Shown piece by piece: positions 3,787-27,405 of a stretch of 34,126 nucleotides of DNA. The first letter of the stretch is position 1, and each line of letters begins with the position of its first letter. Source of the stretch: Guillardia theta CCMP2712 (lineage: Eukaryota > Protista > Cryptophyta); NCBI RefSeq assembly GCF_000315625.1, contig NW_005434670.1:44558-78683 (forward strand). Direction: 5' to 3'. A model generated the notes under the pieces. It had not been told where the DNA came from. It was given only the letters and a program-made list of their open reading frames with translations, and made no database searches. The position numbers and the translations under genes were made by a program.

Positions 3787-4347
3787 AGCTCGTGATGTCG
3801 TCACGCGGGTTTCTGGAGAACTATATTTGATCTGTATGGCTTGCAGAGCCTCTCGCAAACAAATTCAACGCCTTCGATACAGATTTAGATTGAAAACAAC
3901 CAACCAACAATTTACCTCGGATATATTCTTGTCCATCACTTTTTCTTCTGGAAGAGAAGGAATTCTAAGATGTAAATATCATCAGCAGAGATAAGAAAGG
4001 ATAAAAACTTTCGTACTTTTCCATGATCTCCTCCATCATTTGAATGTTCTGCTTATCAATGTCTCCAAGCTCTTGCAGCATCCGCAGATTCTCATTTCTG
4101 GCACATGTATGAGAAGAGCATCTCAGCATGTACGGAGAGGGGGGTCACCTCCATTTCTCGTTCATGTATTCTATCAGAGCTCTGTCAACAATCGCGACGT
4201 CCTCGCTGCTCTTCTCCTCCTGCCTCCCTGCCTCCCGTTGGCTCATTGCACCGCACCTTACACCCCTACCGTAAAACCCTAAAAAAATGTTTTTTTATGA
4301 GTCATCTTTATTTTTTCAAGTGGAAACATGCAAGCTCAAAACCGAAG

Positions 4348-5697
4348 ATGAGGGGATCGCGGGCCCCTCTGCCCGTCGCCTCTGCTCTCCTCGTCCTCTC
4401 CTCCTCCTCATTCTGCTCTCATGGGATCCCTTCCACTCCTTCCTCCTTGTTGACGCATCATGCGCGTGCTTGGAGAGCCGTGTGGCTGCACTGCATGGTT
4501 AGTTCGAATTTCGCACCTCACCTTTCCGACCCGATTTTGTCTTGTAGCCTTGCACCTTCTGTTTCTCTGACAGGCGATTCAGATATTGCGTGGTGGAGGA
4601 AAAATAGATTTGTCTTCCGATCTTTCGGATTATCTAGAATATTTTCCCGATACTCCCGAGGACTCCAAAGAAGTAATTCTTAAATAGCTACTAATGTATT
4701 CGATGATCAATTTGGTGCAGCCATTCATTACAGAATTTTCGGAACCGGGTATTTCAATGAAGTTGAATGAAATTTGATGACATAAACTGCTGACAGTAAC
4801 AAGTGATGACTGGTCGCAAGAGATCAGCATTAAAGTGATTGCAGCAAAACTCTACTAAATCTTGTGCTGAATCATTTTACGTCAGCGATGGGAGCTAAGA
4901 CGAAAACAATTTAAAGAATATTATCAGAAGATGGAAGAAAATCAGAAGTCCGAGGTGGTTGTTTGCTCTTTTCGTTTTGATCGCTGACTTGCTTCAAAAA
5001 GCAAGCTGAACAGTTCCAAGTAGCAGACAAGCTCCGAGTGGAGTTTCAGGAATGTAGTATAGTCCTTCTGAAAGTGTCATGATAGAGACCCACTAGGTCT
5101 CAGCTCCACACGTGCTTGATGGGATAAGAGGAGGACAAAAGCTTGTTCTCAGCGGAAACCTTGAAACTACTGGACTTTGGCATGCAGACAAGGTGAGGAT
5201 AGATGGTTATCCATGATTGGTCTTGTTTGGTTCTAACAATCTTTGTAAGGGCATTGTCATGAATGCTACATCAAGTTTTCCCATCTTCAAGACAATCGTC
5301 CTTTTTCCAAAGACGGCTCAACAAGTAACTTTCAGCAATCGAATAAGAGTATCACTGAATTTCGTTCAGCTTGATTATAAGTACGCTGTTTTGTTCCAAA
5401 CTGGCGAATCCAGCGCTGTGCAGTGGGAGGTGAAATGCGAGGTGAGCCTGGTATCAATGACTTAATGACAGACGAAAGTGAGAAGAATCACACTCGTTAA
5501 TAACACGGTCATCAAAGATCATTTCGTAGAAGATCGATGGAAACTTTCCCGAATCGTCCAGACTCCATACACAGTAAGTTATGTCTGAGTCTATCTCAAC
5601 AGATCGCGCTTTGAATGATCTCATCATCCGTCTACTTTGCTTGCAGATGAGTGCTGAAGAATGGAAGACATGGTTTCTGTACCACATTGCCCACTGA
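4348..5697 (+). CDS. Signal-peptide protein with CBM20 starch-binding domain (multi-exon)
   Basis: Hydrophobic N-terminus MRGSRAPLPVASALLVLSSSSFCSHG. Spliced C-terminal part VSAPHVLDGIRGGQKLVLSGNLETTGLWHADKGIVMNATSSFPIFKTIVLFPKTAQQLDYKYAVLFQTGESSAVQWE...VRRITL...EDRW matches the CBM20 pattern (G....G.W, YKY, WE, R, D.W). TGA at 5695-5697. Middle exons are not fully resolved. Confidence 0.75.
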
Positions 5698-6480
5698 CGG
5701 GCCACCGCGGGACTCGATCAGTCACGCACTGACGGTTAAGTTTGGGGGATCTCCTGATTGTCTTCGTACTGATCTTTACTTGAACTTAAAGTTTGAGTGA
5801 AGAAGAGTCGGTGGCCCGGCCGCGGGCAATGATCCGAGTCGGAGTCGGATTAAGTTACTAGAGGCTCGGAGCCTGAGGTTCAATGTGACCGTCACAGTAC
5901 CGTACGGTACGGTGTGACACGTGACTCGGACGTTTGACAGAGTAAATTTCACGTCTCAGTTTCACGGCCGCCGCAACCGGGTGACTCAGTGGCACGCCGA
6001 CAGTTCTGGGTCACTGAGTCAGTGAGCGGCCTCCGAGCCTGGGCTTGCCGCCGCCGCGCGCCGCGCCGCGGCGTCAGCCTGGCCCGCCACCGAGTCACTA
6101 CGAGTCAACCGTTGAACTCGGGCGGCCCGGGTCCGATCTGGGACCGTCCCGCCGGGGTTTGACTTTTACGGTTTGACTAGTAGCGGCGGCGATCCCGAAA
6201 CCCAATTGAGCGAGTGACCCGGGGTACGGTCCGCCGTCGGAGTCGGTGGCGTGACCGTGTCGGACTCAGCCTGACAGTGACCCGGCGTACTCCGAGTCTG
6301 GCAGTGCCGGCCGGCCACACTGCCGCGGCGGATCCGACGGCCTCGGCGGCACGGCCGGGTTGCCAAGTTGCCGCAGTGCGGGCGGCCCGCCCGGCCCGCG
6401 CTCCACGTCCCGGGAGTCCGGCGTACGGTACGATCGGGGTGACTCATCCACTCAGGGCTTCAAAGTGCACGAGACTGAGG
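5698..6480. repeat. GC-rich island of short palindromes
   Basis: tccga-g-tcgga 5833-5843, aggctc-g-gagcct 5862-5874, tgtgac-c-gtcaca 5884-5896, gtac-c-gtac-g-gtac ~5897-5910, tcactga-g-tcagtga 6011-6025, tcaac-c-gttga 6105-6115. Confidence 0.75.
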
Positions 6481-6599
6481 CTTAAACTAATTAACTAAAT
6501 CATATCACCTACACGTGCAGCCAGCCGATGCTAGAGGAGCTGAAAGGACAAGAAGAGTGAAGCATCCATGAAGATGCGTGAAAGAGCCGGGAGCCTTTC

Positions 6600-7856
6600 C
6601 TTGCTCCTCTCACAGAATAAAGGAGGAACAAATCACCTCGAGCTATGCCTGCTTGACAGGTCAGACGATTCTAGCTGACCCACAAGACGCTTCAATGGTT
6701 TGAAGAACAATCCAAGGTCATTGCGAATGTGAAGTGATGTCTGGTTGCAATGGTCTTGCTGTTGAACTTCAATATATGCACTGTGATCGTCCACATCAAC
6801 CCAGCTCGCTTTGAGACGGCCTGAACACCCGTCATTGAAGAGAACTTGTTCTCTAACAAATTTCTTATGAGTGCATGTCTGTCTGATTTCCCTTTGTTTC
6901 ACTCTTGCATTCAAGCAAGCTATCTGACCATCATTTTTCAGGCGACTGCAATACCTGAATTGAAATGTTGGAAGGAGACGTAATCAACAGATGTTGATGC
7001 TTTGTTGATGTTCCTTGCATCGATGCTACAGTGGTCAAAAACATTTTCAAGCTGTGTGGTCACACCCTGATACGGTTCGATTCCGTATGCTTGAATGTGG
7101 TTATAGTTCTCCTTCCTTGGTACAGTGAAATTTCTTTGTATTTCCGTTTCTGCGAATTAAAATCTATCACTGCATTATCATTTTTTAATTAACACACGAC
7201 ATTCCGAATCCATCAAAATCAATTGCTTTCTTCTTTCACATCGCTGCAACAAGGTCAACGCATAATCGTTGATTCAGTAATTCCTATGAATGAATGAAAT
7301 CGTATCCAAAAAGTCCAATGACATCGCAGGCTATCACCTAACTAAACCGGTCTTGTGTTGACGCTATAGCAACATGTTCAACATGATTTTAGACATTAGT
7401 ACAGAATAAAGGGTGTTGATTCAAACAAATTGGAAAATTGGAATTTATTGGGCATAAAACACACATTGAAGGTCTTCAATGTGTTTGCTTTAGGATTGCT
7501 TGCCGCGAAGTGGTGTATGGTAATAAGACAACTAAACAATATGCTACAGAATTCAATATGAACACATCTCATGCTAAGACTGAAGTAAATTTCTTGCAAT
7601 CTTCTGTTTCTATGAAGAAGAGCCCCTTCCGACGGATATCAAGCCACGACACATGATGCTCATTTCCCTTAGCATCAATCATGACCCGCAAAAGCATCTT
7701 AACTTTCCAGTCTTCACAGCAATTTTCTTCACAAACGCTCAGATTCGAGAATTGGCGAGTCATGATGTTCTCGTTGAAGTTGGCGACGGAGGAATATGAC
7801 GCATAATCAGTATTTTGTCGCGACTCTTCCAGGAAGGTATAATCTTGAGTCATCAC
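6600..7856 (-). CDS. Hypothetical multi-exon protein
   Basis: Protein-like open segments (7569-7856 MTQDYTFLEES...; 6633-6830 GRLKASWVDVDDHSAYIEV...) with minus-strand splice-like boundaries. No family recognised and ends are approximate. Confidence 0.4.
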
Positions 7857-8799
7857 AATTCGCGTGGCCGTACACAGACAACTTGGGATTCCCCTTCAAT
7901 TTGGCCGGTTTTGACGATAGAAGGAGAAGAGAGGAAACAACCAGATAAGAACCAAATGTTTCCCAGAGAGAATGAGCCTCACGAGTCCAGTGTTTCGTTC
8001 AAGGTACCCCGGCGAGCCTGGAGCGAGCGCACGTGCACTCGTGTGTAGGCGGCAAGAAGCAAGAAGAGCAGTGAGGCAGAGAACAACCAAGGCAAGGAGA
8101 GTTCAAGGGGAGGGAGGGCGAGGGCAACGGCTTCTGGAGTGAAAGCGACTTGCGACTTGCGACCAAGTAGGGTTGCGGGGGTGCGGGTAGTCGGAGGAGC
8201 TGCTGCAGCCTTTTCAACTGCCCGGAAAAGGGCGGGTAGCGGTGTATCTGCTCAGGATACCCCTGCAGTACTCGAGGAAGGTAGGGGTACTATTACCGGA
8301 AAGAAGGTTTAGAACGCAAAACTACGGGTGGTGCAGGGATGGGCAACGGTGGTCCCGGAAGCATGGCAAAGGCGTGTCGGAAACAAGACTGGGTCACGTG
8401 AGCAAGTCCAGAAGCTTCTACGTGTAAGGCTGTGGACAAGTTTTGACGAAACGATGTAATATTGAAAGATGAAAAGTATTGTTTTGACTTGTTCTAAAAA
8501 GAAACACAACGTTTTATGGCAGGGGGGCAGACACGTTTCTGATTACCCCACCCATCCCGCGAAGGAAAAACCTGGGTACATCCATTTAACTGCCAGGGAG
8601 CATGCTGAAAAGATTTGAATCGTTTGGGTTTCACCCGACCGATCCAACCTTGCCTCAGAGATATTGTCGTGATACCGTGACGAGGCCGGCCACCCTGCCG
8701 CCCGGTCACGGTCCTGATCTCTTACGAGCAATGGGCGCATCGGAATCCTTTGTACTGCGCAAAGTAACTAAACAATTATATACAGTGAGAAGAAATTGA

Positions 8800-9225
8800 C
8801 TAAATTCAGTTCCCGGGCTCCGGGTCCGAGCCCTGGTAGCAACACTGAAGCCTCAAGAATGTCGGATAACCTGCTGACGCTCAGCGGCTGGCCGTTGGGC
8901 GAGGCTAACCAGGTACTGCCGGCACCCTGCGCCCGAGCCTCATGAACGGTGCCGCCGCCTGGCACACCAACGACCCGCCCGTCAGCGGCCGCAGCTGTGC
9001 GCCGGAGCATGCCATAGTGACGCCGCGTGGCACGATCCTTTGAAGCTCAGGCCTAGTCAGTCACTGCGTCACGGTGCGGGGGATAGAGGCTTTGCAGTTT
9101 TGATTGACTCGTCAGGAAGACTCTGCGGAGGTCCGTCTCGGACAAACTTGCAAACTGACCAGTCATAGTGGCCCGTCACGGCCGCCCAGTCAAGTTGGGC
9201 TGACGGTGCAACTTGAAGGGCCTCA
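8800..9225. repeat. GC-rich palindrome-word island
   Basis: Same vocabulary as 5698-6480 (cagt-c-actg 9058-9066, gtcacgg, tgactc, ccggg, aagtt/aactt). Lies upstream of the gene at 9259. Confidence 0.55.
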
Positions 9226-9258
9226 CTCATCCCTCACGTACCACTGAGAGCCTCCCGT

Positions 9259-10937
9259 ATGAGCAGAAGCGTGTCTTTCACGCCCACCAAGAGCGACTCT
9301 CCCTTGGAGTACCCCTCCACGTCTCCATGTAATCTCAGTCTTGTGAAGCTGACCGTGACTTCCCTCTCTCTCCCCCTCTCACCACGTTGACTTCCTTCCC
9401 CCTCTCTTCCCCTCCCTGTCTTTCCCTCCAAAGTTTGTCCCCGGTGATATTGCCTGTGAGCTCCTCCGATGCTTGATGGTCAAGTGTATAACCCGAAGCT
9501 CTCCTTCCCTGTCTTGCCTGCGCTCTCACTGCCCTCCTCCTCCTTGATGTCCTTGTAGTTTACGAACGGGTCTTACAGACCTGATATCCATCATCCTCCC
9601 CTCTCTTCCTCTTCTGCCTTCTGTTGCTGATGAGATCTGTGGCAGCGGTGGAATGGAAGCCTCCAACAGGTGGCAGCCCAACTCCCTCTCGGCGATCGAC
9701 CCTCGTATCTCCTCCCATAGGGTGAGAGACGTGAATCTCATCCCCGAGCCCTTCTTTCTTGCCCTTCGACATACGCTCTTGCTCCTGACCTCGGCCATCA
9801 TCAGGAGCCACGGCAAAGTGTGGGGAAGGTACGACAACTTGATGGACATCGCTCGACGTCCCATTCCTCCTCCTCCTCCGAAGCGGGGGGAGAGAAGAAC
9901 TATGTCTCAGCAGGTCAGCATGTTCTCGGAGGGCTTAGGGAAGTGCAGCAGCGCATGACTGACTGCAAGCAGGGAGGTCGATGGAGTTTCTACGAGCCCA
10001 TCTCTGAGATGTACGTCATCAGTCGGGTCAGCGCTCAGACGCCAGGACCAGGATCATACGGGGAGAGAGGGACGCCAGACTCAGTACTCAGCACAAGGGC
10101 ATCGCCTTTCGGCAAGGTTAAATCAGTAGACTCAGCTGGTGTGAGGTCACTCAGAGCTGCTGCAGACGGCAGGTGGAAAGTTTAGCTTGAGCAGGAGGAG
10201 GAGCCACTACTTGGAGGCATGCCGAGTAGCTGAATCAGTGAACATGCATTGAGATGAATGTTGTTGTTTGACTTTTATCCTTGCAGGTCCCTGGGCCAGG
10301 ACAGTATGACACAGACCATCTCGGAGTGACGGGGAAGATAGTCTCGTCCTTACATCAGCCATCCTCCAATCAATTTCGGACGGCTGCAAGAACAAGCCAG
10401 CAAATCTTGCCAGATAACTACTTCGAGGTGCAATGGGTTGAGAGCTGGCCCGGCGAGATTGACCTCTGTTCAGAGCTTTGAAAGCATGACCATCAGCGGA
10501 GGAATGCCTTCTGTCCGCTGGCTGTTCCAGTACATGCAGCACCAGGTTGCTTCCTCGCCTCCTCGCAGCCAGCCAGTGTAACATCTCCTTGTGCAGGCGG
10601 ACATCATCGCAATGGAGCAGCGACTGGTCATGAGCAAACGTGATCTAAACTCACTCACGAGCTTTCCTGATCCCTTGATGTCTTTCACGCAGGCGTGCCA
10701 GCGAGTAAAATGCACAGGCTCGGTAGATGCGTGAAGATTGAGGCAGCACCTCTCTGACCCAGGTGCAGGAAACACTAAGTTCTCAAGACAACGCAAAGAA
10801 GCGATCCCTCCGCACGTTCACAAGGTCGTAAAAGTCTCCTTCACTGCGATGAGTTGCCTGTCTTCTGACCTTCCCCTCTCTAGATTCATCGCGAGTTATC
10901 GCAGTGGGAAGAAGGCCAACATACAGGCAGCACGTAG
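9259..10937 (+). CDS. SHIPPO/ODF3-type Pro-Gly-Pro repeat protein (probably flagellar microtubule-associated), multi-exon
   Basis: Exons encode SAQTPGPGSY (~10030-10060) and VPGPGQYD (~10287-10310), the PGPGxY repeat. The last exon reads IHRELSQWEEGQHTGST*. Many short GT-AG introns. Start is tentative. Confidence 0.65.
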
Positions 10938-10999
10938 AGCGATTGCTGTTTTTCTCCTTCTAAGTTACAAGCTTGACTTGATACATACCGAAAAATGAA

Positions 11000-11850
11000 G
11001 GAGTCCATCAGAAGGCTCCAGTATATTTCATGTTGCCTGAGCTGTTTTGCTTTCGAGGGCGAGATTGATCGTTTTTGAACCATCCTTCATATCTGTCCGC
11101 CATATGCTCTGCCAATGTCTCGGTCACAATCATGCATCGACCAGACACAATTATAGCCCGAACCTGAGTACTCCGATGGAGAATCAACGCAATTTGCGAA
11201 TTCATTGCAAGAATACACGTTGCTCATCAATTCGTCAACAGGCCATTGAAAATCTGCGATGGAGGCAGACAAGTGGTCATGAAATTTCTGTTGCAATATG
11301 CAACAGGATGGTATAATACCGTAATCTTCCACCGTGACAAGCTTTGTGCATCTGCGGACCAAAGCAAACATCTGAGAATGAAAGCATCAGAATGAGGATT
11401 CAATGTTTGTTGTTGTCATTTTCGTGTCAGATTGACAAACGATTCTCACTAAAATAAATTCTAAGATGTAGATCGGAGTTATGAAGAGAAAATCGTTAGA
11501 AATTGCAAACAACGTAAAAACATACAAGAATGAAAGACATATAATTGGTTAGCTTCTTGAACGCGAAAGAAATTCCTTGTACATGGTTTACCCCCTTGCC
11601 ATGGTTATTTTCATTCTACCTTCTCGTCCCTGATGCCAATTCCGATGAATCTCGCTCTCGCTCTCGTTTCCCTTGCTCACCTCTCACGCACAAACTCTCG
11701 CCCTTGCTCTTGCTCTTCAAACTGCTCTTGCGCTTGCTCTTTCCCTTGCCCTTTCTCTTTCCCTTGCCCTTGCCCTTGCCCTTGCCCTTGCCCTTGCCCT
11801 TGCCCTTGCCCCCGGAGTCCCTTAGACTAGTAGCTCTCCCACGCTGCTGA
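11000..11850 (-). CDS. Possible hypothetical multi-exon gene including a (GK)n exon
   Basis: Minus strand reads SGGKGKGKGKGKGKGKGKEKGKGKEQAQEQFEEQEQGREFVRE followed by GTGAG. A further open segment lies at 11087-11371 with intron-like breaks. Confidence 0.3.
11743..11811. repeat. (CCCTTG)n hexamer microsatellite
   Basis: About 8 perfect consecutive cccttg units at 11761-11808 plus degenerate flanking units. Confidence 0.95.
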
Positions 11851-11869
11851 GCACTTTATGTGCTACAAG

Positions 11870-12770
11870 CAGCGGCCTCACGTGACCGACGGCATCGCGA
11901 CGCATCTGTCAGGCGTGTCGCTGCGGCCTCATTCACTGCGGCATCTCGGCATAGCAGCGGCTGAGGTCATGTGGAGGTCAGGCTGTCATTATTTGACTAC
12001 CTATGCGGCTATTTCCGGAACGCCGCGGGGTCACGGTACGGTCACCGGGACAGTACCCGGATCCTCAGTAGTACTCAACTTTCAGTATCCGGTGACTGCC
12101 GGGGCCGCCGCCGGTAACTTCCATGGCCGCCGAGATCCGAAGTTTGCGGCAATGCGGCCCGCTAATCATTAACTGAGAGTCGCCGCGGCCCCAGGCCCGG
12201 CCCGTGATCCGATCGGATGAACGGTTACGGTTCGGACCGGTTCGGACTCCCGGGCCGTTCGAGAGCCTGTCTGGCCCGGGGGGGGGCAGCTATCACTGAT
12301 TGAAGCGAATCAGCGGCGGCGGCTCAAGTTTACTCAGGCCGAGTAGTCATTCTAAACGCTGGCCGCCGGGACTCAGACTCCGAAAAACAGGCTTGGCAGC
12401 CTGGTTCAAACGGTTGCCGCCGGCGCAGTGCTAAATGCCCGGCGCCGTACCAACTTGGCAAACTTCAGGCTTGAAACTTGGCCTCCGTCGCACGCCACGC
12501 CGTGGCGCTCTTGTAGTCCAGCTTCCCAAGGTCGGACCGTTCCAGCCTGAGCCTCGGAGGCTCGGAGGCCAGGCTCAGTAACCGTCAGCCTAAGTAGTAT
12601 TGCGGCTCCTCCGACGATCCATGAAGCCTTGCAAATTCTTCGATCATCGGATCACGGTCAGTACCGGGTGACCGTCTGTAAGATGCCACGGTCACTTGCT
12701 GCAGTGCGCCGCGAGTCTGCCGCGCCGCTGAGTGCATCCCGGCGGGCGGCCTCCCGGCATTCCGGGCAGC
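11870..12770. repeat. GC-rich palindrome-word island
   Basis: gcctc-g-gaggc 12551-12561, atccgatcggat ~12207-12218, tcacggtacggtcacc ~12031, ggactcccggg ~12244. Confidence 0.7.
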
Positions 12771-13297
12771 AAGAGGGAACTTCGAAGAAGACCAGTTATA
12801 GCCGTTGTGACCCAAGGAGAGGTGGCTGTAAAGAACACCGTAAGGCTCGCATGAATCCTGGATGCGAACCATGAGCGGAGTTGCCTTGAACATTCGCTGT
12901 AGACGCATTTCCCGTCTGATCCACTTAGATGTTGGCTTTCTCGTACACCCAGATCGAAAGCAGCACTTTGCTGGTCGCAATGACAACTTGTCAAAATCAG
13001 GAATCCATTATTAAAAAGCTTCTGCAGGCGGCTTCAATTAAGAAGTCGAACACATCAAGAAGGATAACTGTAATTAAAGTTGTGACTTTGACTTTTGACT
13101 TTTATGTATGAAATTCAAAACAAATTGGTGGAGATTCCAAACTTTAATGAAACAGCTCGTTCCACCCAAAATTTTGCATATCCCGTTGTTTGCTCTCAGA
13201 TGTAATCTTGTCGTCAGCATCCAGATGTCTCTCTGAGTGTGTGCTCTGCTAATCGCCGGGCGTCATGTCATATCGCCCCCCCACCTTACGGCACCTC

Positions 13298-13457
13298 TGT
13301 TGTATACACAACCTTGCGTAAGACGTTGAGCTCAGATGATCCTAGGATCTCTGTTTATTAAGCACACACACTCATTAGATCAGCAGCACCACTGCAGGAA
13401 TCTGCATCGTCATCCTATTTCCCTACGCTACCTCCGGTATGAGTCCAGAATACAACA
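13298..13457 (-). repeat. 3' LTR (160 bp)
   Basis: Direct repeat of 19124-19298 with 7-bp terminal inverted repeat TGTTGTA/TACAACA. AATAAA on the minus strand. Weak purine tract (gtgggagcga) just inside. Confidence 0.93.
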
Positions 13458-13522
13458 TCGCTCCCACTGCGAGACGACAAGATGGTCCACCTGTCGTTGA
13501 CTTCGCTCAGAAGAATCTTGAG

Positions 13523-16500
13523 TTAAGGATCAGCAGAAGAAGAGGAAGAAGAGCGGCGGGAAGGTGACGCTTGAGCTAATAAAGAAGATTCAAATTGTTG
13601 AATTAAAGCACGAATACCAGATTTCTTGTTGAGTTCAGAAGCTGATTTCCAGGAGTGATCAGCTGGGTTAGGATAGCCTTTCCAATGAACAAGATATTGG
13701 ATACCACGACCTCGTTGACGTTTGTCGAGAATTTGTTCCACTTCGTATTCAAGTCCTTGAGCTGTCGAAAGAGGATCCGGTCGATCGACGTGAAGCTCGA
13801 AGTTGGGATCAGTGACGGTCCTGATGGGGGCGAAGCCACTTGAGGTTGAAGACGCTGTGTTCAAGATGACGAAAGCGATCTGTCAGTTCGAGATGAACAG
13901 TGTTGTCAGAAACAAAGGAGAGGATCTTGAAGGGACCAATGAAACGAGGACGGAGCTTGGGAAAGCTGTCGGTGATGGGAATATTCGTCGTTGAGAGCCA
14001 CACGAGATCGCCGATGTTGAAATTGTGAGGGCGACGGTGGTGGTCAAGGGTCTGTTCAGTTGAACGAGCCATGTGATCGAGGGCATCGCGAGCTGCTTCC
14101 ATGTGCACTTGGATGGCTTCGCGAATGTCGTCAGGATCATCAGACGAGTTGGAAAGGTCAGGGAGAGCCAGTTGAGTTTTGACTCAGTGACGTTGCGGCC
14201 ATAAATAATCTCGAATGGCGCAAGGCCTGTTGAACGTTTGACGGAAGAATTGTAATGCATCTCGAAGAGAGGAAGAAATCTGTCCCAGTCATGGTTGACG
14301 CGATTGGCACACTACGGTAGATGCGAAGAGCTTCAATCAAGACGGAGTTGAGGCGTTCAGGTCGAGCATTGCCTTGAGGATAGTAAGGCGAAGAATGCTT
14401 GATTTTGACCTGCAAGATGTCGAAAAGTTTAGTCCAAAAGGCAGAAGAGAAGATTTTTGCATTATCTGAAATGATTTCGTTGGGAAGGCCTTGGTTGGCG
14501 CAGACTTTCGAAACGAAAAGATCGGCAGCTTGTTGAGAGGTGAGAGTCTTCTTGCATGGAGACAGAAAGACACGGCCAGAAAAGTTGTCAACACAAACGA
14601 AGATCGAGTCGTAATGAGAACGAGTAGGTGGGAAGCCGGAAACAACATCGATGGAGATTGTAGCAAAACGATCAGACGGAGCTGCTTGACTGTGCGACGG
14701 TCCCATCTGTGGCTTGCGATAAGATTTGTATTGGATGCAAGATTGACAGGAAAGGATGTAACGTTCGACTTGTTGACGCATAGAGGGCCAATAAACAACA
14801 GGAACAAGAGCCAAATATGTTCGAGAGAAGCCGCGGTGACTGTGAAGGTCATGGGCACGGTATAGAACTTCTTTGCGAACAGATTGAGGAATGCAAATGC
14901 GTTGTCGGTGAAGACTATCTGTTAGAATCAGGAGATGATTTTCAATGTGAAAATGCTTGTACGATGGGTTGTTTTGAACTGCTTGATAGATTGTGGAAAA
15001 GTATGAACACGAGGAATATGCTTGGACGATTGCGTCGTGAAGAGATTCAACAAGAGAAGCATTATCAGCAGGAGCATCGAGAGCAAGGAGATGATGAAAA
15101 TCTTGATCATCTGAATGTAGGATTGCGTCATCGCGTGGAGGTGCGACGTCGTCGTCGGGATATTGGCGGCGGCTGAGAGCGTCCGGGACTCCCGGACAAC
15201 ATTATCGGTACCTTTCACGTGCGCGATCTCGACGATAGAGAATTCACTGAGAGTTTCTAACCAGCGGCGAAGACGACCTTTGAGATCCTTTTGAGTTTGA
15301 AAGTACGTGAGAGCCTTGTGATCAGTACGAAGGATGATGGGCTTGCCAAGCAGATAAAATTGGAAGTGAAGAAGCACGTCTTTGATGGCCAAAAGTTTGC
15401 GCTCAGTGGTTTGATAATTTCTTTCTGCATCAGTAAACAGGCGACTGTAGAATCCAATGACTTTCTCTTTGTTGTCAGCGTCGTACTGAAGAAGAACACC
15501 GCCGAGAGCTGTGTTTGAGGCATCGGTGTGAACTTCTGTTCTAAGCGCTGGATCAAAGTGAGAGAGAATTGGGGAGGAGGTTAACCGGTGTTTGAGAAGA
15601 TCGAAGGCTTGCTGACACTCGGGAGTCCATTGAAAGACGACATTCTTACGAAGAAGAGCATGAAGAGGAGCAGCAATGTGGGCATAGTTGCGAATAAAGC
15701 GACGGTAATATCCGGAGAGCACAAGAAATATTTTGATCTCCTTTGCGTTGCTGGGTGGTGGCCAGTCAAGGATCGCGCTGGTCTTACTGGATTGAGCCTC
15801 GATATGCCATCAGCAGAGATTTGATGACCGAGGAACTCGACACTATCTTGAAAGAGCAGTGCACTTTTGATTTCTTGAGGTAAACTTGATTCTCGCGGCA
15901 GCGCAGAAGAACGCGACGAAGAGTGTTGAGGTGTTGATCAAACGTGCCAAAATCAAGGATGAGCAAGTCATCCGTTGAATGTATGGGAATACACTGGTAA
16001 TATCACGAAAGAGAAGAGTAATCCATTCTTGAAAAATATTGCTTGCGTGAATGTAGCCGAATGGAAGATTGCGAAACTGATATTTGCCAAACTTGGTGAT
16101 GATGGCGACATATTTGCGATGATCAGGGGCAACAGGAATTTGCCAAAAACCGCGGAGAAGATCGAGAGCTGAAATCCAAAGTTTGTATTCAGAAGGGTGC
16201 AAGAAACGCTTGGATTTGCGAATGACCTCGGCGACAGATTCTAACATCTCCTCAGGGTTAGGAGTGGGTTTTTGCGGCGACTGTAAAGCACGGGGAATCC
16301 AAAGGGGCTGTTGGAAGGTTCGATGATGTTGCGAGATAACAAATATTCCAACGTCTTTTGAAGTTCCTGTTCGAGGAAAAGCGGGAGCCGATAGGGTCGT
16401 AGACTGACAGGTTTAGCATCAGGTAAGATATCAATGGTGGCCTGAAATTCACGAGAAATGTTATAATTGGCGGGCAGATCATCGGTAATGACATCAGAAA

Positions 16501-17288
16501 ATTCGTCCAGAAGTAAAGAAATTGCTTGCTCCTCTGGGGACACATCAGAAGAACGAGCCGGAGAGAAAGAATTGGCTGACGGTGGCGTGGAGGATGAATC
16601 AACTTGGAGAACGCAGAGAAACCAATCGTCCTCATCGTTGTCTTGTTGTTGAGAAGCAAAAACATCGGTCAATGACAGGAAAGTAACTTGCGCAAAGGAT
16701 TGGGGAGCTGTGAGAGAATTAAGCGGAACCATTTCACTGGCATGTCGGAAGACGCACGAGTTGTTGCTTGTGGGAAGATTCAATCCATACTTCACGGGTT
16801 CGGGCACGAAAAACAAGTCCATATCGAGTTTGCCACGTCAGGGAAAAAATGCATGTAGATAATGTAGAAGGCAACACATTGAAATTATCGGTAAATGAGT
16901 GTTTGCCAATTGAATAGGTAAGAGAAATAATGCCGAGAGTCTGTAAGTGAACTCCATTGGCGACGCATACAGGGATACGAATAGAGCTGTCAATAGCTGA
17001 TAAGGGAATATGCAAACGATCGAGGAGGGCGGTCGAAATAACATCGACGGCAGCACCGCCATCGAGAAGAGCTGTAAAATGATAAGGGTCAGCATCACTG
17101 GGAGAAATAGATGAACAAGTCACGGGAAATTTGATGAGATCGGTGACCAGCGATGCTGAATTGTGCAGAACGGAAGGGGACGGAGTTTCAGCTGAGAAGA
17201 TAAAATGAGAACAAAGCTGGGGCTCCGTAAAGGAAGAAATCATGCTCGTCGTCGAACTGCGATAACCGAGAGCATGACCTGCGGTACC
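13523..17288 (-). pseudogene. pol: pro-pol (PR-RT-RH-IN-chromodomain), frameshifted, with a deletion in the N-terminal RT region
   Basis: ORF pieces 16734-17243 (PR), 16241-16822, 15843-16247, 15784-15966 (RT), 14928-15722 (RH), 14158-14814 (IN), 13883-14260, 13809-14108 and 13523-13864 (chromo). The usual R.C.DYR.LN block is missing between PFGFPVL and PTPNPEEML. Confidence 0.93.
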
Positions 17289-19073
17289 CTATTCCTGAGG
17301 CGGAGGATCAGCAGGAGGCTGAGCTCTTGCTGACGAGGACGAAGAGACTGTCCCAGGAGGAGCAGAAGCGGATGCGACTGCAGGGGAATGCGTGACGGGA
17401 GAGCCCGGGTTAAGAGCTGGAGCACCATTCTGAAGGAGAGCCGTGATGACATTGACGATGGCGGCTTGACTCGCTGGAGGATGGGAGGGCTGTGTCACGG
17501 CGGAAGAAGCATTGCGATCAGCTTGCTTTTTCTTGCGGCAGTACTTCAACGTGTGTCCAGAACGTTTGCAGTACGTGCAGAAATAATTTGGGGGAGAACC
17601 GGAGGACTGCGCGGGAGCTGGGGAGGGCTGAACTCCTGGCGTCGACGGAGAGGGTTGAAGGGCACAAATAGGCTGTGGAGCCGGAACCAAAGAAGACGGT
17701 TTGACGAAGGCGAAAGCTTTCTGTGCTAGAAGCGACATCGTGGCCGCTGTAGCAGGATGCATGTGCGCTATGGGGACCATAACGAGTCGAACTTCCGGGT
17801 CGAGAAAACCGTTGGCGAATTGTTGAAGAAGATTGTGCTCTTGAAATACGACAGTTTCAGATTTGTAGAGTAAGAGTTCGTCAACATAACGTTGCGTCCG
17901 AAGAGTATAATCAGTGATCGATTCGTTGACGCCTTGACAGAGATTGGTCACTTGGTGCAGTAGTTTGGCGATGTGAGCCGCGGGAGGGAATTGCTGCGTG
18001 ATGAAAAGACAGAATTCCGACCAGGGAAGAAGAAACCATTCGTCAAGAGGACGATCGTGAGACATGCGTTGAAGAACAGAGTCATCAAGAAATGTCGTTG
18101 TATAGTAAACCCACAGGTTGCCGGGAATGCGTTGAACAGACAGAGCGCGTCCCATCTGAGAGAGCCAGCTGTGAATGCTTCGAGAATCAGCCTGACCGAG
18201 AAAGGGGGTGATGGACGTTCTGGGCTGAAATTTCGGGAGTTTGTCACCAGGGAAAGGTTGAGGAGGACGGACGGAATCGACGAAGGGTCCGATCTGACTC
18301 AACCGGGATGACATGCGTCTGCATCAGCCGAGGGCTGGGAGGGGAGGGGGAACTCGCCATGCGCGGAGACGTCTGCGCGCTAGACGGTGCTGGGAGGGGC
18401 TTCGGCTGGATTGCTGCCACGGAGGTTGAAAGGGCGGAAACCAGACGGTCTTGAAGTTCGTAGGATTGAGCAAGTAGACGATCATTGAATTCCTGAGATT
18501 GCTCAAATTGACGACTCGATCCAGCTTGCGTTCAAGTGCTTCTTGACGTTGCTGGGCATCTGCGTTCTGTTGCAGGAGTAAAGCAAAAAGTTGACGAAGA
18601 GATGGTTCCTTGTCGTTGGTGGCAGGAGAATTTCGACCTGAAGACATCGCAGAGATGGGCTCTGCGGCAGGGGCATCATTCCGACCCGAAGACATCGCAG
18701 GGATGGGCTCTGCGGCAGGGGTACGCGGAGAAAAAGCACCAAAAGCGGAATGACGGGAAGCACGCGGAGCTGGAGACTCCTGAACGAAGATAGACGGGGC
18801 TGGTACTGGCGTGAAAAAAAATGGGCGAGCACCAGAAGCTGGCCCATGATGGGAATCCTGCTGTGGTCGATCTTGCATAATTGAATCATCATCTTTCGTT
18901 GCGGAAAAAGGACGGGGGAATTGAAACTGTTGAGCTCCAACATTTGGGTGGATCGAAGTTGAGTCAGAGACTTGTTCCGTAGATCTCGGAATCCTTCGTT
19001 CACTGGTCTGAGCCTTACGCGATTTTCTCACTTTCAATACTGATAGTTTGCTTGCTTTCTTTGCTGAAATCAT
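17289..19073 (-). pseudogene. gag: gag, probably one ORF broken by two small insertions
   Basis: ORF 17289-18314 has a retrotransposon gag core (LCQGVNESITDY) and a zinc knuckle. ORF 18324-19073 starts just after the PBS and can be joined in frame by removing insertions at ~18514-18518 and ~18298-18301. Confidence 0.85.
18630..18721 (-). repeat. 48-bp-period tandem duplication in gag
   Basis: Encodes PAAEPIPAMSSGRN / PAAEPISAMSSGRN. Confidence 0.9.
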
Positions 19074-19105
19074 CCTTTGAGATTCTGAATCAGTGCTGGA
19101 ATGTG

Positions 19106-19121
19106 AACCAATTCGCTACCA
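19106..19121 (-). promoter_or_regulatory. Primer-binding site, likely tRNA-iMet
   Basis: TGGTAGCGAATTGGTT lies 2 nt inside the 5' LTR. TGGTAGCG is the Ty3-type iMet PBS core. Confidence 0.8.
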
Positions 19122-19123
19122 TA

Positions 19124-19298
19124 TGTTGTATACACAACCTTGCGTAAGACGTTGAGCTCAGATGATCTTAGGATCCGAGGCTGTTTATTAAGCACACACA
19201 CTCATCAGATCAGCAGCACCACTGCAGGAATCTGCATCGTCATCCTATTTCCCTACGCTACGTCCAAGGGGCGTCCGGTATGAGTCCAGAATACAACA
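19124..19298 (-). repeat. 5' LTR (175 bp)
   Basis: Matches 13298-13457 apart from a few substitutions and two indels (+4, +11). Confidence 0.93.
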
Positions 19299-19996
19299 AC
19301 GAAGAAGGAGAAGAGTTCGGTCCTGCGCCACTGGCGAGGACATGACGGGGTCGGATGAAAAATTTTCCGAGCTTGGCAGACGTACCGATGTTGCAGGGGA
19401 GGCTGCTCGCTGAGTTGCCTCCTCTGATCGCAGAATACTTCGCAAGGGAGTATCCCTCTTGTTTCGGGCCCGTTGATCCGCGCTAGACAGCGCTTCACGT
19501 TGTACATCTCCATCCCTATAAGGTTGAGTCAAAGATCCACTGGTCTGACTCGGAGAAAGCTGCTGCTGCTGCAGCTGCAGCCGCTCGCTCCATTCGACTT
19601 CTTCCTCAGAACTCTCTTCAGCAATTTCTGTTTGAAATGCTCCTGATTGCTTAGATCGAGGTTGAGGGCTCCTTTCCGGCTGAGGTTTCTTTCCTCCTCT
19701 TCCTTGTTTCGAGGTCATGAATCAACCACTTCGCTTCCAGAATGTTGTATACACAACACAGAGATTGTCAACGACACGAGTAAAGTAAGGATCATGAAGA
19801 AGATTGAGAAGCAGGAAATAGAAGTCTCTAAGTTTACTGGGAGGTAAACTACGCACAACCACCACACTCACTGTGCATGCAAGTGGGGGAAATTCAGGAG
19901 GCCGTCCGCACGAGATGCGTCCGCCTATATAGGGAATATCCGGCAGAGTATCCGACGAGTACCCGAGGTTCCGGATCCTCATGGACTGATACAACA
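19299..19996 (-). mobile_element. 5' remnant of a second related LTR element: LTR 19743-19996, PBS ~19724-19739, gag-like start from 19718
   Basis: 254-bp segment bounded by TGTTGTAT...ATACAACA, sharing TGTTGTATACACAAC with the first element's LTR. PBS-like TGGAAGCGAAGTGGTT. The ATG-initiated low-complexity ORF (MTSKQGRGGKK...) is cut by the first element's LTR. Confidence 0.8.
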
Positions 19997-19999
19997 CAT

Positions 20000-20464: not shown

Positions 20465-21130
20465 ACATGTTTAACTTCACTTCACTTCAGCCTGACACGA
20501 TGATTCACTGAACGAACGTTGAACGTTTTCCGAAGTCTTGCCGCCGGCGTCCCGTTACCTCACGGTGGTGTACGGTCACTGTCCGATCAGTCCGACACTG
20601 GCACGGCGGTACTGCAACATCAAGTTACTACTTGAACACGGGTCACTGTCACGCCACATGAACCGTCTGTAGTACTTAGCACGGCAGTACTATCACTACC
20701 GTTACCGTACGGTAACTTAAGTCGTACCAATGAAATTTTGGAGTGCGGCTCCCGGGGCTATCCCGCCCGTTCTTACCGTACCCGGTCCGATACAGCCGCC
20801 GCGTGAGCGCCGCTCCGCTCAGTGCTATCGTGCCCGTACGGTACCGGCGTACGGTACCGTACCCTACTAGCCACAGTACGGTCCGCACCTCAGTTACTCA
20901 AAGTTAGCCACAGTCTGACAGGCGGCCGCTGTTCCGACTTCTCCTGATTGTCCTTGTACTAATTTTTAACCTAACTTTGAGTGTCTTGAAAAGTAACTTC
21001 GCTGGGATCGCGCCGCAGCCGCGCCGCCGACCACGCTGCCCGGGCCCGCCGCCCGGGCCCCGGCTTCACTGCCGCAGTGCCATTGCCCGGCCGCATACGG
21101 TACACTCCAGCGGGCACCGGGGAGCACCGG
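20465..21130. repeat. GC-rich palindrome-word island
   Basis: gttaccgtacggtaac (16-bp palindrome, 20701-20716), cgtacggtaccggcgtacggtaccgtac ~20835-20862, 12-bp inverted repeat 20896-20907/20971-20982. Confidence 0.75.
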
Positions 21131-22728: not shown

Positions 22729-22828
22729 NNNNNNNNNNNNNNNNNNNNNNNNNNNNNNNNNNNNNNNNNNNNNNNNNNNNNNNNNNNNNNNNNNNNNNNN
22801 NNNNNNNNNNNNNNNNNNNNNNNNNNNN
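22729..22828. other. Assembly gap (100 N) in a C/T-rich tract
   Basis: N run; atctttctatcttgcttcctc occurs on both sides. Confidence 0.97.
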
Positions 22829-26279: not shown

Positions 26280-26580
26280 CTTTCGGCGAACTGGCAGGCG
26301 GGCCCGGAAGGTCGGCCCGGGCCCTGTCCGGGCCGCCCGTACGGTACTCAGTGCCCGCGGCCCGCGGCCCGGCCGCCGGCGAAGCAGGCCGGTCCACTCG
26401 TCACGTGCCGCAGTGCTTCAACCGAGGCTTTCCTCAAAGTCACAATAAGTCAAAAATCAGTCCAGTGCCGTGACTGCCCGGCCAACCGCCCCGCCCGCGG
26501 CTCGGGCCGGGCCGCCGCCCGCAACCGTGATCATGATCGGACTCCGGGGGAGGCGGCGTGCATGACTGTGTGAATGCTGA
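26280..26580. repeat. GC-rich palindrome-word island
   Basis: ccgtacgg, gatcatgatc, cggccgg and gtgactg words upstream of the DUF179 gene. Confidence 0.6.
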
Positions 26581-26593
26581 ATTTCCTGGCACA

Positions 26594-27170
26594 CCTTTAC
26601 TCAAAGTTAAGTTAAACGGCGAGAAGAGAAAAGACGGGCGGCGAGAACCAAACCCAATCCCGGCTGCCAACAGCTGTCCCCCAAACTTAACTGATACCTT
26701 CACTTAACTGCGCGCTGGACAATCCCCCCGCGCCGCCGCCATGCCAGCGATGTCGCGGTGGCCGCCGCCGAAGGAATGAGACGCATACCGGGATGCACCC
26801 GCGATGATGGCAGCGTAGGACAGGGAGGCCCGCCTTGAGCTGACGAAAGATCCTGGACCGGATGCGTTTGCAAGTCGGATCACCTGAGACGTCTTGCGAG
26901 GCCGAGAGACCATCCAGCGCTGCCGTTTCCTTGTTCGCCGAGCGATCCGCCAGCCCTGGCACCACAGAAAGCGCAACGCATCGTCCTGCACGGAGGCCAT
27001 CAGTGCTGGCGATGATGGGAAGAAAGGCCTTTTGCGGGACGTGCTGAGCATATGCATTACGATGCCCTCGGATCTTCCGCTGTGCTGCCGCTTGCAGTTT
27101 GCTCCGAGCGATGTCCGGTATTCCATCATTGTCAAAAACATGTGACATGCTGAAGTCCAGGATTAACCCA
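26594..27170 (-). mobile_element. Degenerate 3' fragment of a non-LTR retrotransposon with restriction-like endonuclease-type C-terminus
   Basis: Joining frames gives LILDFSMSH...LQAAAQRKIRGHRNAY...AFLPIIASTDG.VQDDALRFL...LADRSANKET...FRQLKA, resembling the D..(AA..K...Y)..F.P......G.....A..FL RLE pattern. Frameshifted. Confidence 0.6.
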
Positions 27171-27239: not shown

Positions 27240-27405
27240 GCTGAATCATTCGCGGGCGGCCATCCGGGCCCCCGGCCGGGCCCGGTGACGGACGGTGACA
27301 GTCACCCGATCACTCGCAGAGTCACTCTCAGTGGGCCGCCACCGTGACCGTACGGTCATCATTGAGTCACGTTCCGACTCGCAGTACCGCCCGCCGCCGT
27401 GCATC
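27240..27405. repeat. GC-rich palindrome-word island
   Basis: ggtgac-a-gtcacc 27294-27306, tgaccgtacggtca 27345-27358. Confidence 0.65.

What the first reader, a model, noticed from the sequence alone, without database searches (positions are those of the whole stretch)
13814..18518. Frameshifts in the dead retroelement are palindrome-creating micro-insertions
Restoring the reading frame or conserved motifs requires deleting short insertions, and each creates an inverted repeat around one central C/G. (a) 15181-15197 gtccggga-c-tcccggac: removing 8 bp restores DNVVPDALSR. (b) 14312-14320 ctac-g-gtag: removing 5 bp restores ALRIYCANRVNHDWD. (c) 15968-15978 tcatc-c-gttga (1 mismatch): 5 bp inside the catalytic YI|DD. 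(d) 14180-14191 tgactcagtgac (nested tga-c-tca, tca-g-tga): removing 8 bp gives YGRNVKTQL. (e) 13814-13820 gac-g-gtc: 4 bp. (f) 18512-18518 cga-c-tcg: 5 bp. (g) Possibly 18295-18301 tga-c-tca. Ordinary slippage gives direct duplications or homopolymer indels, not this pattern. Inverted duplications are the known signature of hairpin opening (hAT excision footprints, RAG P-nucleotides) or of template switching. Inference: this genome has a recurrent palindrome-writing mutational process. Cases (a)-(c) are anchored by motifs; (d)-(g) are placed by eye. Some other shifts (e.g. an AT duplication near 15802) do not fit.
Basis: partly seen in the sequence, partly recalled or inferred. Interest (0 to 1): 0.9.

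Follow-up and report, generated by a model that had tools for sequence, protein, structure and literature searches.

The report
Palindrome-linked insertions in dead retrotransposon
A dead jumping gene in the alga Guillardia theta is broken by short insertions; one is clearly an inverted copy of its neighbouring bases, and the evidence that the others are too is mixed.

Summary
The window is Guillardia theta nuclear DNA, not human. Bases 13298-19298 (minus strand) are one degenerate Ty3/gypsy chromovirus, here called TE-A. It lies next to a fragment of a second element (TE-B, 19299-19997).

All seven quoted strings are at the stated coordinates. The place of (b) is free within 29 nt. Sites (f) and (g) have no anchor.

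Case (a) is real and exceptional. Eight inserted bases are an exact inverted copy of the adjacent eight. They turn a 9-nt palindrome into a perfect 17-mer, where about 0.07 are expected in the element.

Six of seven anchored short-insertion sites overlap a C/G-centred odd palindrome (P about 2e-4, post hoc). TE-A has 69 such palindromes against 39 expected. Nineteen of 20 control stretches show no excess.

Against this, longest-arm tests without (a) are not significant. Four other indels in the window show no such palindrome. Case (a) also equals a tandem copy plus one base change.

Verdict: partly confirmed. The most likely cause is a known class, local strand or template switching. A genome-wide process is not shown.

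The parts
13298..19298 (-). TE-A: a degenerate Ty3/gypsy chromovirus-type LTR retrotransposon of Guillardia theta
   Evidence: LTR pair. Pfam domains for gag, protease, RT, RNase H, integrase, SH3 and chromo, in that order on the minus strand. Host identified.
13298..13467 (-). 3' LTR of TE-A (TG...CA ends). Contains a 12-nt even palindrome at 13338-13349.
19124..19298 (-). 5' LTR of TE-A. It differs from the other LTR by 4 substitutions and 2 complex indels (4 and 11 nt longer here).
19106..19121 (-). Putative primer-binding site, 2 nt from the 5' LTR (reads TGGTAGCGAATTGGTT on the minus strand)
   Evidence: Read directly from the sequence. The match to a tRNA was not tested.
17292..19115 (-). 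gag region. Frame 2 has one stop at 18324-18326. Codon usage suggests the frame leaves frame 2 between about 18560 and 18300.
16737..17288 (-). Protease
   Evidence: RVP_2; 35% identity to the L001 protease
15846..16540 (-). Reverse transcriptase, in three frames
16266..16267 (-). Junction of a roughly 91-nt deletion. It removed the N-terminal RT motifs, which take 31 codons in L001.
15973..15980 (-). Site (c): 5 extra nt inside the catalytic Y-I/D-D motif. Four placements are possible.
15854..15864 (-). Overlapped by GCA-G-TGC and by the even palindrome AGTG|CACT.
15798..15805 (-). 2 extra nt.
15201..15809 (-). RNase H and connection domain, intact frame (61% identity to L001)
15181..15197 (-). 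Site (a): a perfect 17-nt C/G-centred palindrome. The 8 extra nt (15190-15197, or rotations to 15186-15193) lie between the DNVV and PDALSR codons.
15163..15174 (-). In-frame CGC triplet duplication (SRRQ where relatives have SRQ). Ordinary tandem slippage.
14161..15189 (-). Integrase zinc-binding and catalytic core domains
14291..14319 (-). Site (b): 5 extra nt somewhere in this 29-nt variable stretch. The palindrome CTAC-G-GTAG lies at 14312-14320.
14181..14194 (-). Site (d): 8 extra nt. They have the form X-Y-X (a 4-nt direct repeat 8 nt apart) with three nested palindromes of 3-nt arms.
13811..13815 (-). Site (e): 4 extra nt between the SH3-like domain and the chromodomain. Overlapped by TCA-G-TGA and GAC-G-GTC.
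13526..13810 (-). Chromodomain and C-terminal tail
18512..18518 (-). Site (f): the palindrome CGA-C-TCG is present. A frame change nearby is plausible but has no anchor.
18295..18301 (-). Site (g): the palindrome TGA-C-TCA is present. No anchor.
19299..19997 (-). TE-B fragment: 5' LTR, primer-binding site and gag start of the L001 family. It abuts TE-A and served as an independent set of indels.

Best explanation
TE-A is a dead Ty3/gypsy chromovirus of Guillardia theta, lying next to a fragment of a second element.

Its pol is broken by:
- seven short insertions (2, 2, 4, 5, 5, 8 and 8 nt)
- one triplet duplication
- one deletion of about 91 nt
- a shift in the protease-RT linker.

I take most of the short insertions to be locally templated in inverted orientation. 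The new bases are the reverse complement of the bases beside them, turning on a single C or G. This is the product expected when a growing 3' end switches strand at, or next to, a short inverted repeat. It can happen during replication or during break repair. The named forms are short-range template switching, quasi-palindrome mutagenesis, and synthesis-dependent end joining with snap-back synthesis. This is a known class of mutation.

Shown here: the element, the positions and lengths of the breaks, and the exact 8-of-8 inverted copy in (a), which extends an existing 9-nt palindrome to 17 nt.

Inferred: the mechanism, and that the insertions with 3-4-nt arms belong to the same class as (a).
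For: - The insertion lengths are fixed by the intact paralog L001 and by Hanusia proteins.
- In (a) the inserted 8 nt equal the reverse complement of the adjacent 8 nt. It is the only palindrome in TE-A with 8-nt arms, where 0.07 are expected.
- (a) and (d) are both 8-nt insertions of the form X-Y-X, with a 4-nt direct repeat.
- 6 of 7 anchored insertion intervals overlap a perfect C/G-centred odd palindrome with arms of at least 3. None overlaps an A/T-centred one. P is 2e-4, or 8e-4 without (a).
- 12 of the 69 C/G-centred palindromes fall in the 3.5% of TE-A around the seven sites.
- TE-A as a whole has 69 C/G-centred palindromes against 39 expected (z 2.8-4.9 under five null models). A/T-centred ones number 44 against 44.
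- Of 20 control stretches, 19 have z between -2.2 and 1.7. They include the intact paralog, two further TE-B copies and 15 unrelated gypsy loci. The 1.2 kb beside TE-A reaches 1.9.
- One polarised insertion in TE-B (+3 at 19793-19795) is also an inverted copy of its neighbour (TCA|TGA).
- Mutations of this class are described in PMC7954356, PMC9435742, PMC8794818, PMC5728401 and PMC4912351.
Against: - Without (a), tests on the longest arm at each site are not significant (Fisher P 0.13-0.29).
- The 6-of-7 test is post hoc, because the hypothesis came from the same sites.
- None of four independent indels has a C/G-centred palindrome. These are the two between TE-A's LTRs and the +3 and +4 in TE-B.
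- Five substitutions in TE-B create no palindrome, and three of them destroy one.
- (a) is also one base away from a plain tandem 8-nt copy.
- A palindrome with a one-base turn cannot be made by simple intramolecular snap-back. For (a), the return switch has no microhomology (my own tracing of the sequence).
- The placement of (b) is free, and (c) has a mismatch.
- Codons under C/G-centred palindromes are only slightly more diverged from Hanusia (59% against 67% identity, P = 0.11).
- No DNA copy of the same family was found, so ancestral bases are inferred from protein spacing only.
Confidence: 0.5

Rival explanations
1. Chance plus ordinary slippage. (a) is a tandem 8-nt duplication of a target that was already palindromic, followed by one C-to-G change, possibly a quasi-palindrome correction. 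The short palindromes at the other sites are coincidences in an element that happens to be rich in them.
For: - The two 8-mers of (a) differ at one base only.
- Odd palindromes with 3-nt arms occur about every 50 nt in TE-A (113 in 5656 nt).
- Per-site P values are 0.15-0.5, and Fisher tests without (a) give 0.13-0.29.
- None of four other indels shows the pattern.
- Ordinary tandem copies do occur here: the CGC triplet and possibly AT.
- Words shared between the insertion sites and the palindrome-rich zones are at chance level.
Against: - 6 of 7 sites hit, all with a C/G centre, has P 2e-4 to 2e-3.
- The required substitution in (a) must hit one given base and give one given product. The two LTRs differ at only 4 of about 170 sites (about 2.4%).
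- The 8-nt unit of (a) has no flanking direct repeat of the kind slippage needs.
- TE-A's C/G-centred excess (z up to 4.9) is absent from 19 of 20 control stretches.
Confidence: 0.3
2. The insertions were made by the element's own reverse transcriptase, through strand switching at hairpins. This would have happened in a non-autonomous lineage copied in trans over several cycles, not by the host's chromosomal mutation process.
For: - The pattern is seen inside TE-A but not in differences that arose after integration. These are TE-A LTR against LTR, with 0 of 2 indels showing it.
- About ten breaks alongside roughly 2.4% LTR divergence is a high ratio of indels to substitutions.
Against: - No second copy sharing the breaks was found. 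However, only protein databases and metagenomes could be searched.
- The neighbouring non-TE zones carry the same C/G-centred signature far more strongly.
Confidence: 0.08
3. Footprints left by cut-and-paste DNA transposons (hAT, Transib or similar) that inserted into TE-A and later excised. Such events leave target-site duplications plus hairpin-derived bases.
For: - Two insertions are exactly 8 nt, the size of a hAT target duplication.
- Both have a 4-nt direct repeat with a filler that is partly palindromic to the flank.
- All ten polarised small indels are gains, as footprints would be.
Against: - In (a) the two 8-mers differ at position 5, not at their junction. In (d) they share only 4 of 8 bases.
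- Hairpin opening gives palindromes with no central base, while these are odd-centred (established knowledge of P nucleotides).
- Lengths of 2, 4 and 5 nt do not fit a single target-duplication size.
- No transposase or matching element could be looked for.
Confidence: 0.07
4. A sequencing, cloning or assembly artefact in the public assembly.
For: - The scaffold has gaps nearby (N run at 22729-22828; the window starts just after a 4.3-kb gap).
- No independent assembly of this locus was found.
Against: - The window is identical to the GenBank scaffold over the 12 kb compared.
- The breaks include a 91-nt deletion and in-frame stops, as expected of a truly decayed copy.
- Multi-base palindromic gains are not a usual error type of Sanger assemblies (general knowledge).
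Confidence: 0.03

Closest known systems
Ty3/gypsy chromoviruses (LTR retrotransposons with a chromodomain after the integrase)
   Same: LTRs with TG...CA ends. Domain order gag, protease, RT, RNase H, integrase, SH3-like, chromodomain.
   Different: A cryptophyte family with no close relative in the databases. The best matches are Hanusia phi transcripts at 64-81% and a G. theta paralog at 50-60% amino-acid identity. The copy is dead and has no target-site duplication.
Short-range template-switch mutations and quasi-palindrome mutagenesis (E. coli, yeast, great apes, human; PMC7202029, PMC7954356, PMC9435742, PMC8794818)
   Same: They create or perfect short inverted repeats in one event. They occur at existing imperfect palindromes. 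(a) extends a 9-nt palindrome to a perfect 17-mer.
   Different: The classic events mostly replace bases, or invert the spacer, with little change in length. Here the net result is always a gain of 2-8 nt with a one-base C/G turn. The return switch in (a) shows no microhomology.
Templated insertions of polymerase-theta or synthesis-dependent microhomology-mediated end joining ('snap-back' and 'loop-out'; PMC5728401, PMC4912351, PMC5068794, PMC9303309)
   Same: Short insertions copied from sequence within a few bases of the break, in direct or inverted orientation, flanked by microhomology. The X-Y-X form of (a) and (d) fits this.
   Different: Snap-back needs a loop of several bases and a paired primer end. 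These palindromes turn on a single base. Whether G. theta has the enzyme was not tested.
hAT excision footprints and P nucleotides of RAG/Transib hairpin opening
   Same: A net gain of up to 8 nt with bases palindromic to the flank.
   Different: Those palindromes are even, with no central base, and the changes sit at the junction of the two target copies. Neither holds here.

Membership tests
Ty3/gypsy chromovirus LTR retrotransposon | Two direct long terminal repeats ending TG...CA | tested here: met
   13298-13467 and 19124-19298, with 4 substitutions and 2 indels between them
Ty3/gypsy chromovirus LTR retrotransposon | Domain order protease, RT, RNase H, integrase (integrase after RT) | tested here: met
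   Pfam RVP_2, RVT_1, RT_RNaseH_2, Integrase_H2C2, rve and SH3_Tf2-1, in this order on the minus strand
Ty3/gypsy chromovirus LTR retrotransposon | Chromodomain at the C-terminus of the integrase | tested here: met
   PF00385, E = 2e-12, at 13526-13882
Ty3/gypsy chromovirus LTR retrotransposon | Primer-binding site complementary to a tRNA 3' end, next to the 5' LTR | not tested
   A TGGTAGCG... string lies 2 nt from the LTR. It was not compared with any tRNA.
Ty3/gypsy chromovirus LTR retrotransposon | Target-site duplication of 4-6 nt flanking the element | tested here: not met
   The flanks read ...CACCTC and ACGAAG.... The right flank is TE-B and the left flank is unrelated, so the site was rearranged after insertion.
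Short-range template-switch / quasi-palindrome mutation | The new bases are the reverse complement of directly neighbouring bases | tested here: inconclusive
   - (a): 8 of 8.
- (b): 4 of 4 plus the turn base, if placed there.
- (e): 3 of 3 plus the turn base.
- (c): 4 of 5.
- (d): only 3 of 8.
- The two +2 sites: 2 of 2.
Only (a) is beyond chance on its own.
Short-range template-switch / quasi-palindrome mutation | Ancestral sequence known from an outgroup, so that one event explains the change | tested here: inconclusive
   Only the spacing and conserved residues of relatives at 50-81% amino-acid identity are available. No same-family DNA was found.
Short-range template-switch / quasi-palindrome mutation | Complementarity at both switch points | tested here: not met
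   For (a), the first switch can use the 4-nt palindrome arms. The return has no matching bases. This comes from my own tracing of the sequence.
Polymerase-theta / SD-MMEJ templated insertion | Insertion copied from sequence within tens of bases and flanked by microhomology | tested here: met
   (a) and (d) each have a 4-nt direct repeat exactly one insertion length apart. The filler is palindromic to the flank.
Polymerase-theta / SD-MMEJ templated insertion | The organism encodes polymerase theta | not tested
hAT excision footprint | Two copies of an 8-bp target duplication, altered only at their junction | tested here: not met
   (a): the copies differ at position 5 of 8. (d): the copies share 4 of 8 bases.
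hAT excision footprint | hAT, Transib or similar transposases, or non-autonomous elements, in the genome | not testable with these tools
   The G. theta genome cannot be scanned here. Only loci reached through exact protein look-ups are available.
P nucleotides from hairpin opening (RAG/Transib type) | Palindrome symmetric about the junction, with no central unpaired base | tested here: not met

The most novel reading that the evidence does not exclude
Guillardia theta has a lineage-specific mutation process, biased towards insertions, that writes short inverted repeats turning on a single C or G into DNA that is free to drift.

Under this reading:
- the process accounts for most small indels in dead repeats
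- it raised the count of C/G-centred palindromes in TE-A from 39 to 69
- over a longer time it produced the intergenic zones of this window. There, C/G-centred 5-mers such as ACSGT, GTSAC and GASTC are 3.5 to 4.8 times over-represented, while A/T-centred and even palindromes are not.
Probability: 0.2. Interest if true: 0.75.

Novelty: new member of a known kind. Interest (0 to 1): 0.4.

Why it matters
If the pattern holds genome-wide, G. theta would be a natural case where inverted micro-duplications dominate small insertions, rather than slippage. That would make a rarely measured mutation class (short template switches, templated end joining) directly countable in a protist.

It would also bear on two further questions:
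- how palindromic, hairpin-prone or dimer-binding motifs arise in intergenic DNA
- why all ten polarised small indels seen here are gains.

As it stands, the solid result is smaller: one clear inverted 8-nt duplication, in a newly described, dead cryptophyte chromovirus.

Tried and rejected
1. Search for DNA copies of the same family.
- Protein searches with the integrase piece, the RNase H piece and a profile of all pieces found nothing closer than Hanusia transcripts.
- A metagenome scan gave at most 50% identity in all but one short hit (L055, 59% over 67 residues).
- Exact look-ups of two gag ORFs found nothing.

2. Idea that the inserted bases are pieces of words recurring in the palindrome-rich zones. 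The 12-mer of site (d) recurs at 6010-6021, and a 10-mer of (a) recurs at 6409 and 12244. Rejected: 0.9% of all TE-A 12-mers have a match outside the element, so about 1.3 such matches are expected over the seven sites, and 1 was seen.

3. Hairpins with loops up to 12 nt, and direct repeats within 20 nt, at the junctions. No excess was found apart from (a).

4. Divergence from Hanusia of codons under C/G-centred palindromes. There is a trend only (P = 0.11).

5. TE-B copies from two metagenome contigs, used as a further indel set. One shows a single 11-nt deletion. The other shows five small indels (three in-frame against L001, plus +1 and +6), so it looks partly constrained. Uninformative.

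6. The third LTR copy in L001. It has too few indels to be useful.

7. Literature on palindromes in the G. theta nuclear genome. None found.

8. More G. theta flank to the left of the window. It is a scaffold gap.

Breaks are described only by comparison with intact relatives.

Full report
**What the window is.** An aquaporin ORF at 1327-1917 is 100% identical to GUITHDRAFT_91725 of Guillardia theta CCMP2712. The first 12 kb of the window are identical to scaffold JH992968.1. This is cryptophyte nuclear DNA, not human. The element is a retrotransposon of an alga.

**The element.** Bases 13298-19298 are one LTR retrotransposon on the minus strand, here called TE-A.
- Its LTRs are 13298-13467 and 19124-19298. 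They differ by 4 substitutions and 2 indels.
- Pfam finds gag, protease, RT, RNase H, integrase, the Tf2-type SH3 domain and a chromodomain, in that order but spread over three frames. It is therefore a Ty3/gypsy chromovirus.
- The closest proteins are three Hanusia phi transcripts (64-81% identity) and a G. theta gene model, P0027 (about 57% over the integrase region).
- No near-identical copy turned up in any searchable collection.
- There is no target-site duplication.
- The right flank, 19299-19997, is the 5' LTR, primer-binding site and gag start of a second element (TE-B). It is 98% identical to the element at locus L001.

**A spacing reference.** L001 (G. theta scaffold JH992981.1) carries the TE-B family element that encodes P0027. 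Its LTRs are 100% identical over 248 nt. Protease through chromodomain are in a single frame. I combined this element with the Hanusia proteins and a frameshift-aware alignment. Together they fix how many bases TE-A has in excess between conserved residues.

Breaks in pol, from 5' to 3' on the element:
- a net +1 (31 nt longer) in the variable protease-RT linker
- a deletion of about 91 nt at 16266/16267 that removed RT motifs
- +5 inside Y-I/D-D (site c, 15973-15980)
- +2 in 15854-15864
- +2 in 15798-15805
- +8 between DNVV and PDALSR (site a)
- an in-frame CGC duplication
- +5 somewhere in 14291-14319 (site b)
- +8 in 14181-14194 (site d)
- +4 at 13811-13815 (site e).

The position of (b) is not fixed. 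The anchors are 29 nt apart in a variable stretch. The spacing of 8 residues equals L001's, while 73 of 82 matches to the motif among the homologs have 7. Sites (f) and (g) lie in a gag region without homologs. Codon usage supports leaving frame 2 near 18560-18500 and returning by about 18300, but gives no exact place.

**Case (a).** On the element's sense strand, the bases between the V and P codons read as an 8-mer followed by G and then the exact reverse complement of that 8-mer. Taking out any of five equivalent 8-nt rotations leaves the codons V-V-P-D. Those codons already formed a 9-nt palindrome; L001 has a near-palindrome at the same place. The 17-mer is the only palindrome with 8-nt arms in TE-A, where 0.07-0.09 are expected. 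It lies exactly in a 12-nt junction interval.

There are two ways to describe it:
- an inverted duplication of 8 nt, a single event with an exact fit
- a tandem 8-nt copy plus one C-to-G change, since the two 8-mers differ only at position 5.

The unit has no flanking direct repeat of the kind slippage needs. The required substitution is one given change, and the two LTRs differ at only about 2.4% of sites. I therefore favour the single inverted event. The margin, however, is one base.

**Are the other palindromes more than chance?** Odd palindromes with 3-nt arms are common: 113 in 5.7 kb.
- Per site, the chance of a palindrome at least as long as the one seen is 0.15-0.5. Fisher combinations without (a) give 0.13-0.29. 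This holds whether I compare with random intervals of the element, with simulated random insertions, or with hairpins that have loops.
- A hit/no-hit test gives a different answer. Six of the seven anchored intervals overlap a perfect C/G-centred odd palindrome with arms of at least 3, and none overlaps an A/T-centred one. The chance per interval is 0.11-0.34. P for at least 6 of 7 is 2e-4 (2e-3 for any centre). Without (a), 5 of 6 gives 8e-4.
- This test is post hoc, since the hypothesis came from these sites, so I discount it.

**Replication within the window.** Four further indels were available: the two between TE-A's LTRs, and +3 and +4 in the TE-B fragment relative to intact L001.
- The +3 is polarised by a third LTR copy. 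The +4 is taken as derived because both intact L001 LTRs lack it; the third copy does not align there.
- None of the four has a C/G-centred odd palindrome.
- The +3 is an inverted copy of its neighbour without a central base (TCA|TGA).
- Five substitutions in TE-B create no palindrome.
- Two further TE-B copies from metagenomes added nothing. One has a single 11-nt deletion. The other has five small indels, three of them in-frame.

**Element-wide signal.** TE-A has 69 C/G-centred odd palindromes with arms of at least 3, against 39 expected (Markov-3 z = 4.9; other null models give 2.8-4.7). It has 44 A/T-centred ones against 44 expected. The excess is present in both gag and pol. 57 of the 69 lie outside the junctions. 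Of 20 control stretches, 19 have z between -2.2 and 1.7, and the 1.2 kb beside TE-A reaches 1.9. The controls were:
- the intact paralog and its flanks
- two other TE-B copies
- 15 unrelated gypsy loci
- three gene-rich parts of the window
- the 1.2 kb immediately right of TE-A.

Whether the excess is native to the family or was acquired after death cannot be told without same-family DNA. Codons under these palindromes are slightly more diverged from Hanusia (59% against 67% identity, P = 0.11).

**Indel spectrum.** All ten polarised small indels are gains: 2, 2, 3, 4, 5, 5, 8 and 8 nt in TE-A, and 3 and 4 nt in TE-B. None is a single base. The only loss is the 91-nt deletion. That is unusual for decaying DNA, although the sample is small.

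**Mechanism.** I traced (a) by hand.
- A nascent end on the first palindrome arm can pair with the second arm on the opposite strand and copy four bases back. That gives the observed filler.
- The return to the original template has no microhomology.
- A one-base turn also rules out simple intramolecular snap-back.
- Hairpin opening of the RAG or hAT type gives even palindromes with changes at the junction. This does not fit.

The closest known classes are short-range template switching or quasi-palindrome mutation, and templated insertions of synthesis-dependent end joining. I file the events there by likeness, not as proven members.

**Verdict.**
- The kind of mutation is known, and the element is a new member of a known family.

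Noticed in passing
window 5700-6450, 12000-12760, 20540-21130, 26290-26560, 27260-27400: Five intergenic zones are packed with C/G-centred odd palindromes. Arms of at least 2 occur at 25.5% of C/G positions against 7.3% expected, and arms of at least 3 at 9.4% against 2.0%. A/T-centred palindromes in the zones are at expectation; even palindromes show no excess in the left flank as a whole (z about 1). The top 5-mers are ACGGT/ACCGT, GTCAC/GTGAC, GAGTC, TCGGA and CAGTG. The whole left flank (1-13297) has z = 5-6.4 at every arm length. Another 22 kb of G. theta (L001) has no such zone.
   Followed up: partly
window 5735-5800, 20940-20985, 26599-26691: The palindrome-rich zones share short conserved modules, such as TCTCCTGATTGTC..GTACT, GTTAAGTTTGGGGGA and TTTAAC.TAACTTTGAGT. 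They may therefore be old copies of one dispersed repeat or regulatory block.
   Followed up: partly
window 5897-5910, 20701-20716, 20849-20862, 27345-27358: Even palindromes built on the core ACCGT|ACGGT or its permutation ACGGT|ACCGT recur four times, each 14-16 nt long.
   Followed up: no
window 19299-19997: A fragment (5' LTR, primer-binding site, gag start) of a second, young Ty3/gypsy family abuts TE-A. It is 98% identical to the intact element in L001. TE-A's left flank is unrelated and there is no target-site duplication, so the site was rearranged.
   Followed up: yes
TE-A pol 13811-15980 and TE-B 19793-19989: All ten polarised small indels are insertions of 2-8 nt. None is a single base, and there is no small deletion. 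Indels make up roughly a fifth to a third of all changes.
   Followed up: partly
window 13338-13349 against 19164-19175: One LTR of TE-A has a perfect 12-nt even palindrome (GATCCT|AGGATC) where the other LTR has a T in place of a C. The direction of the change is unknown.
   Followed up: no
window 18640-18735: A tandem duplication of about 45 nt inside gag repeats the peptide AAEPI.AMSSGRN.
   Followed up: no
window 8-127: A 40-residue RNase H-like fragment of yet another retroelement lies at the very start of the window (70% identity to P0133).
   Followed up: no
window 22729-22828; L056 4501-8805: There is an assembly gap of 100 N inside the window. The window also begins right after a 4.3-kb run of N in the scaffold.
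   Followed up: no
L057 about 611 (metagenome ERZ930071 contig): An environmental contig carries a TE-B copy 98.4% identical to the G. theta one. A single 11-nt deletion splits its ORF. Guillardia-like DNA is therefore present in that metagenome.
   Followed up: partly
L001 18941-19477: A 19-nt tandem array follows TTTAGGG-like telomere-type repeats, in the flank of the intact TE-B element.
   Followed up: no
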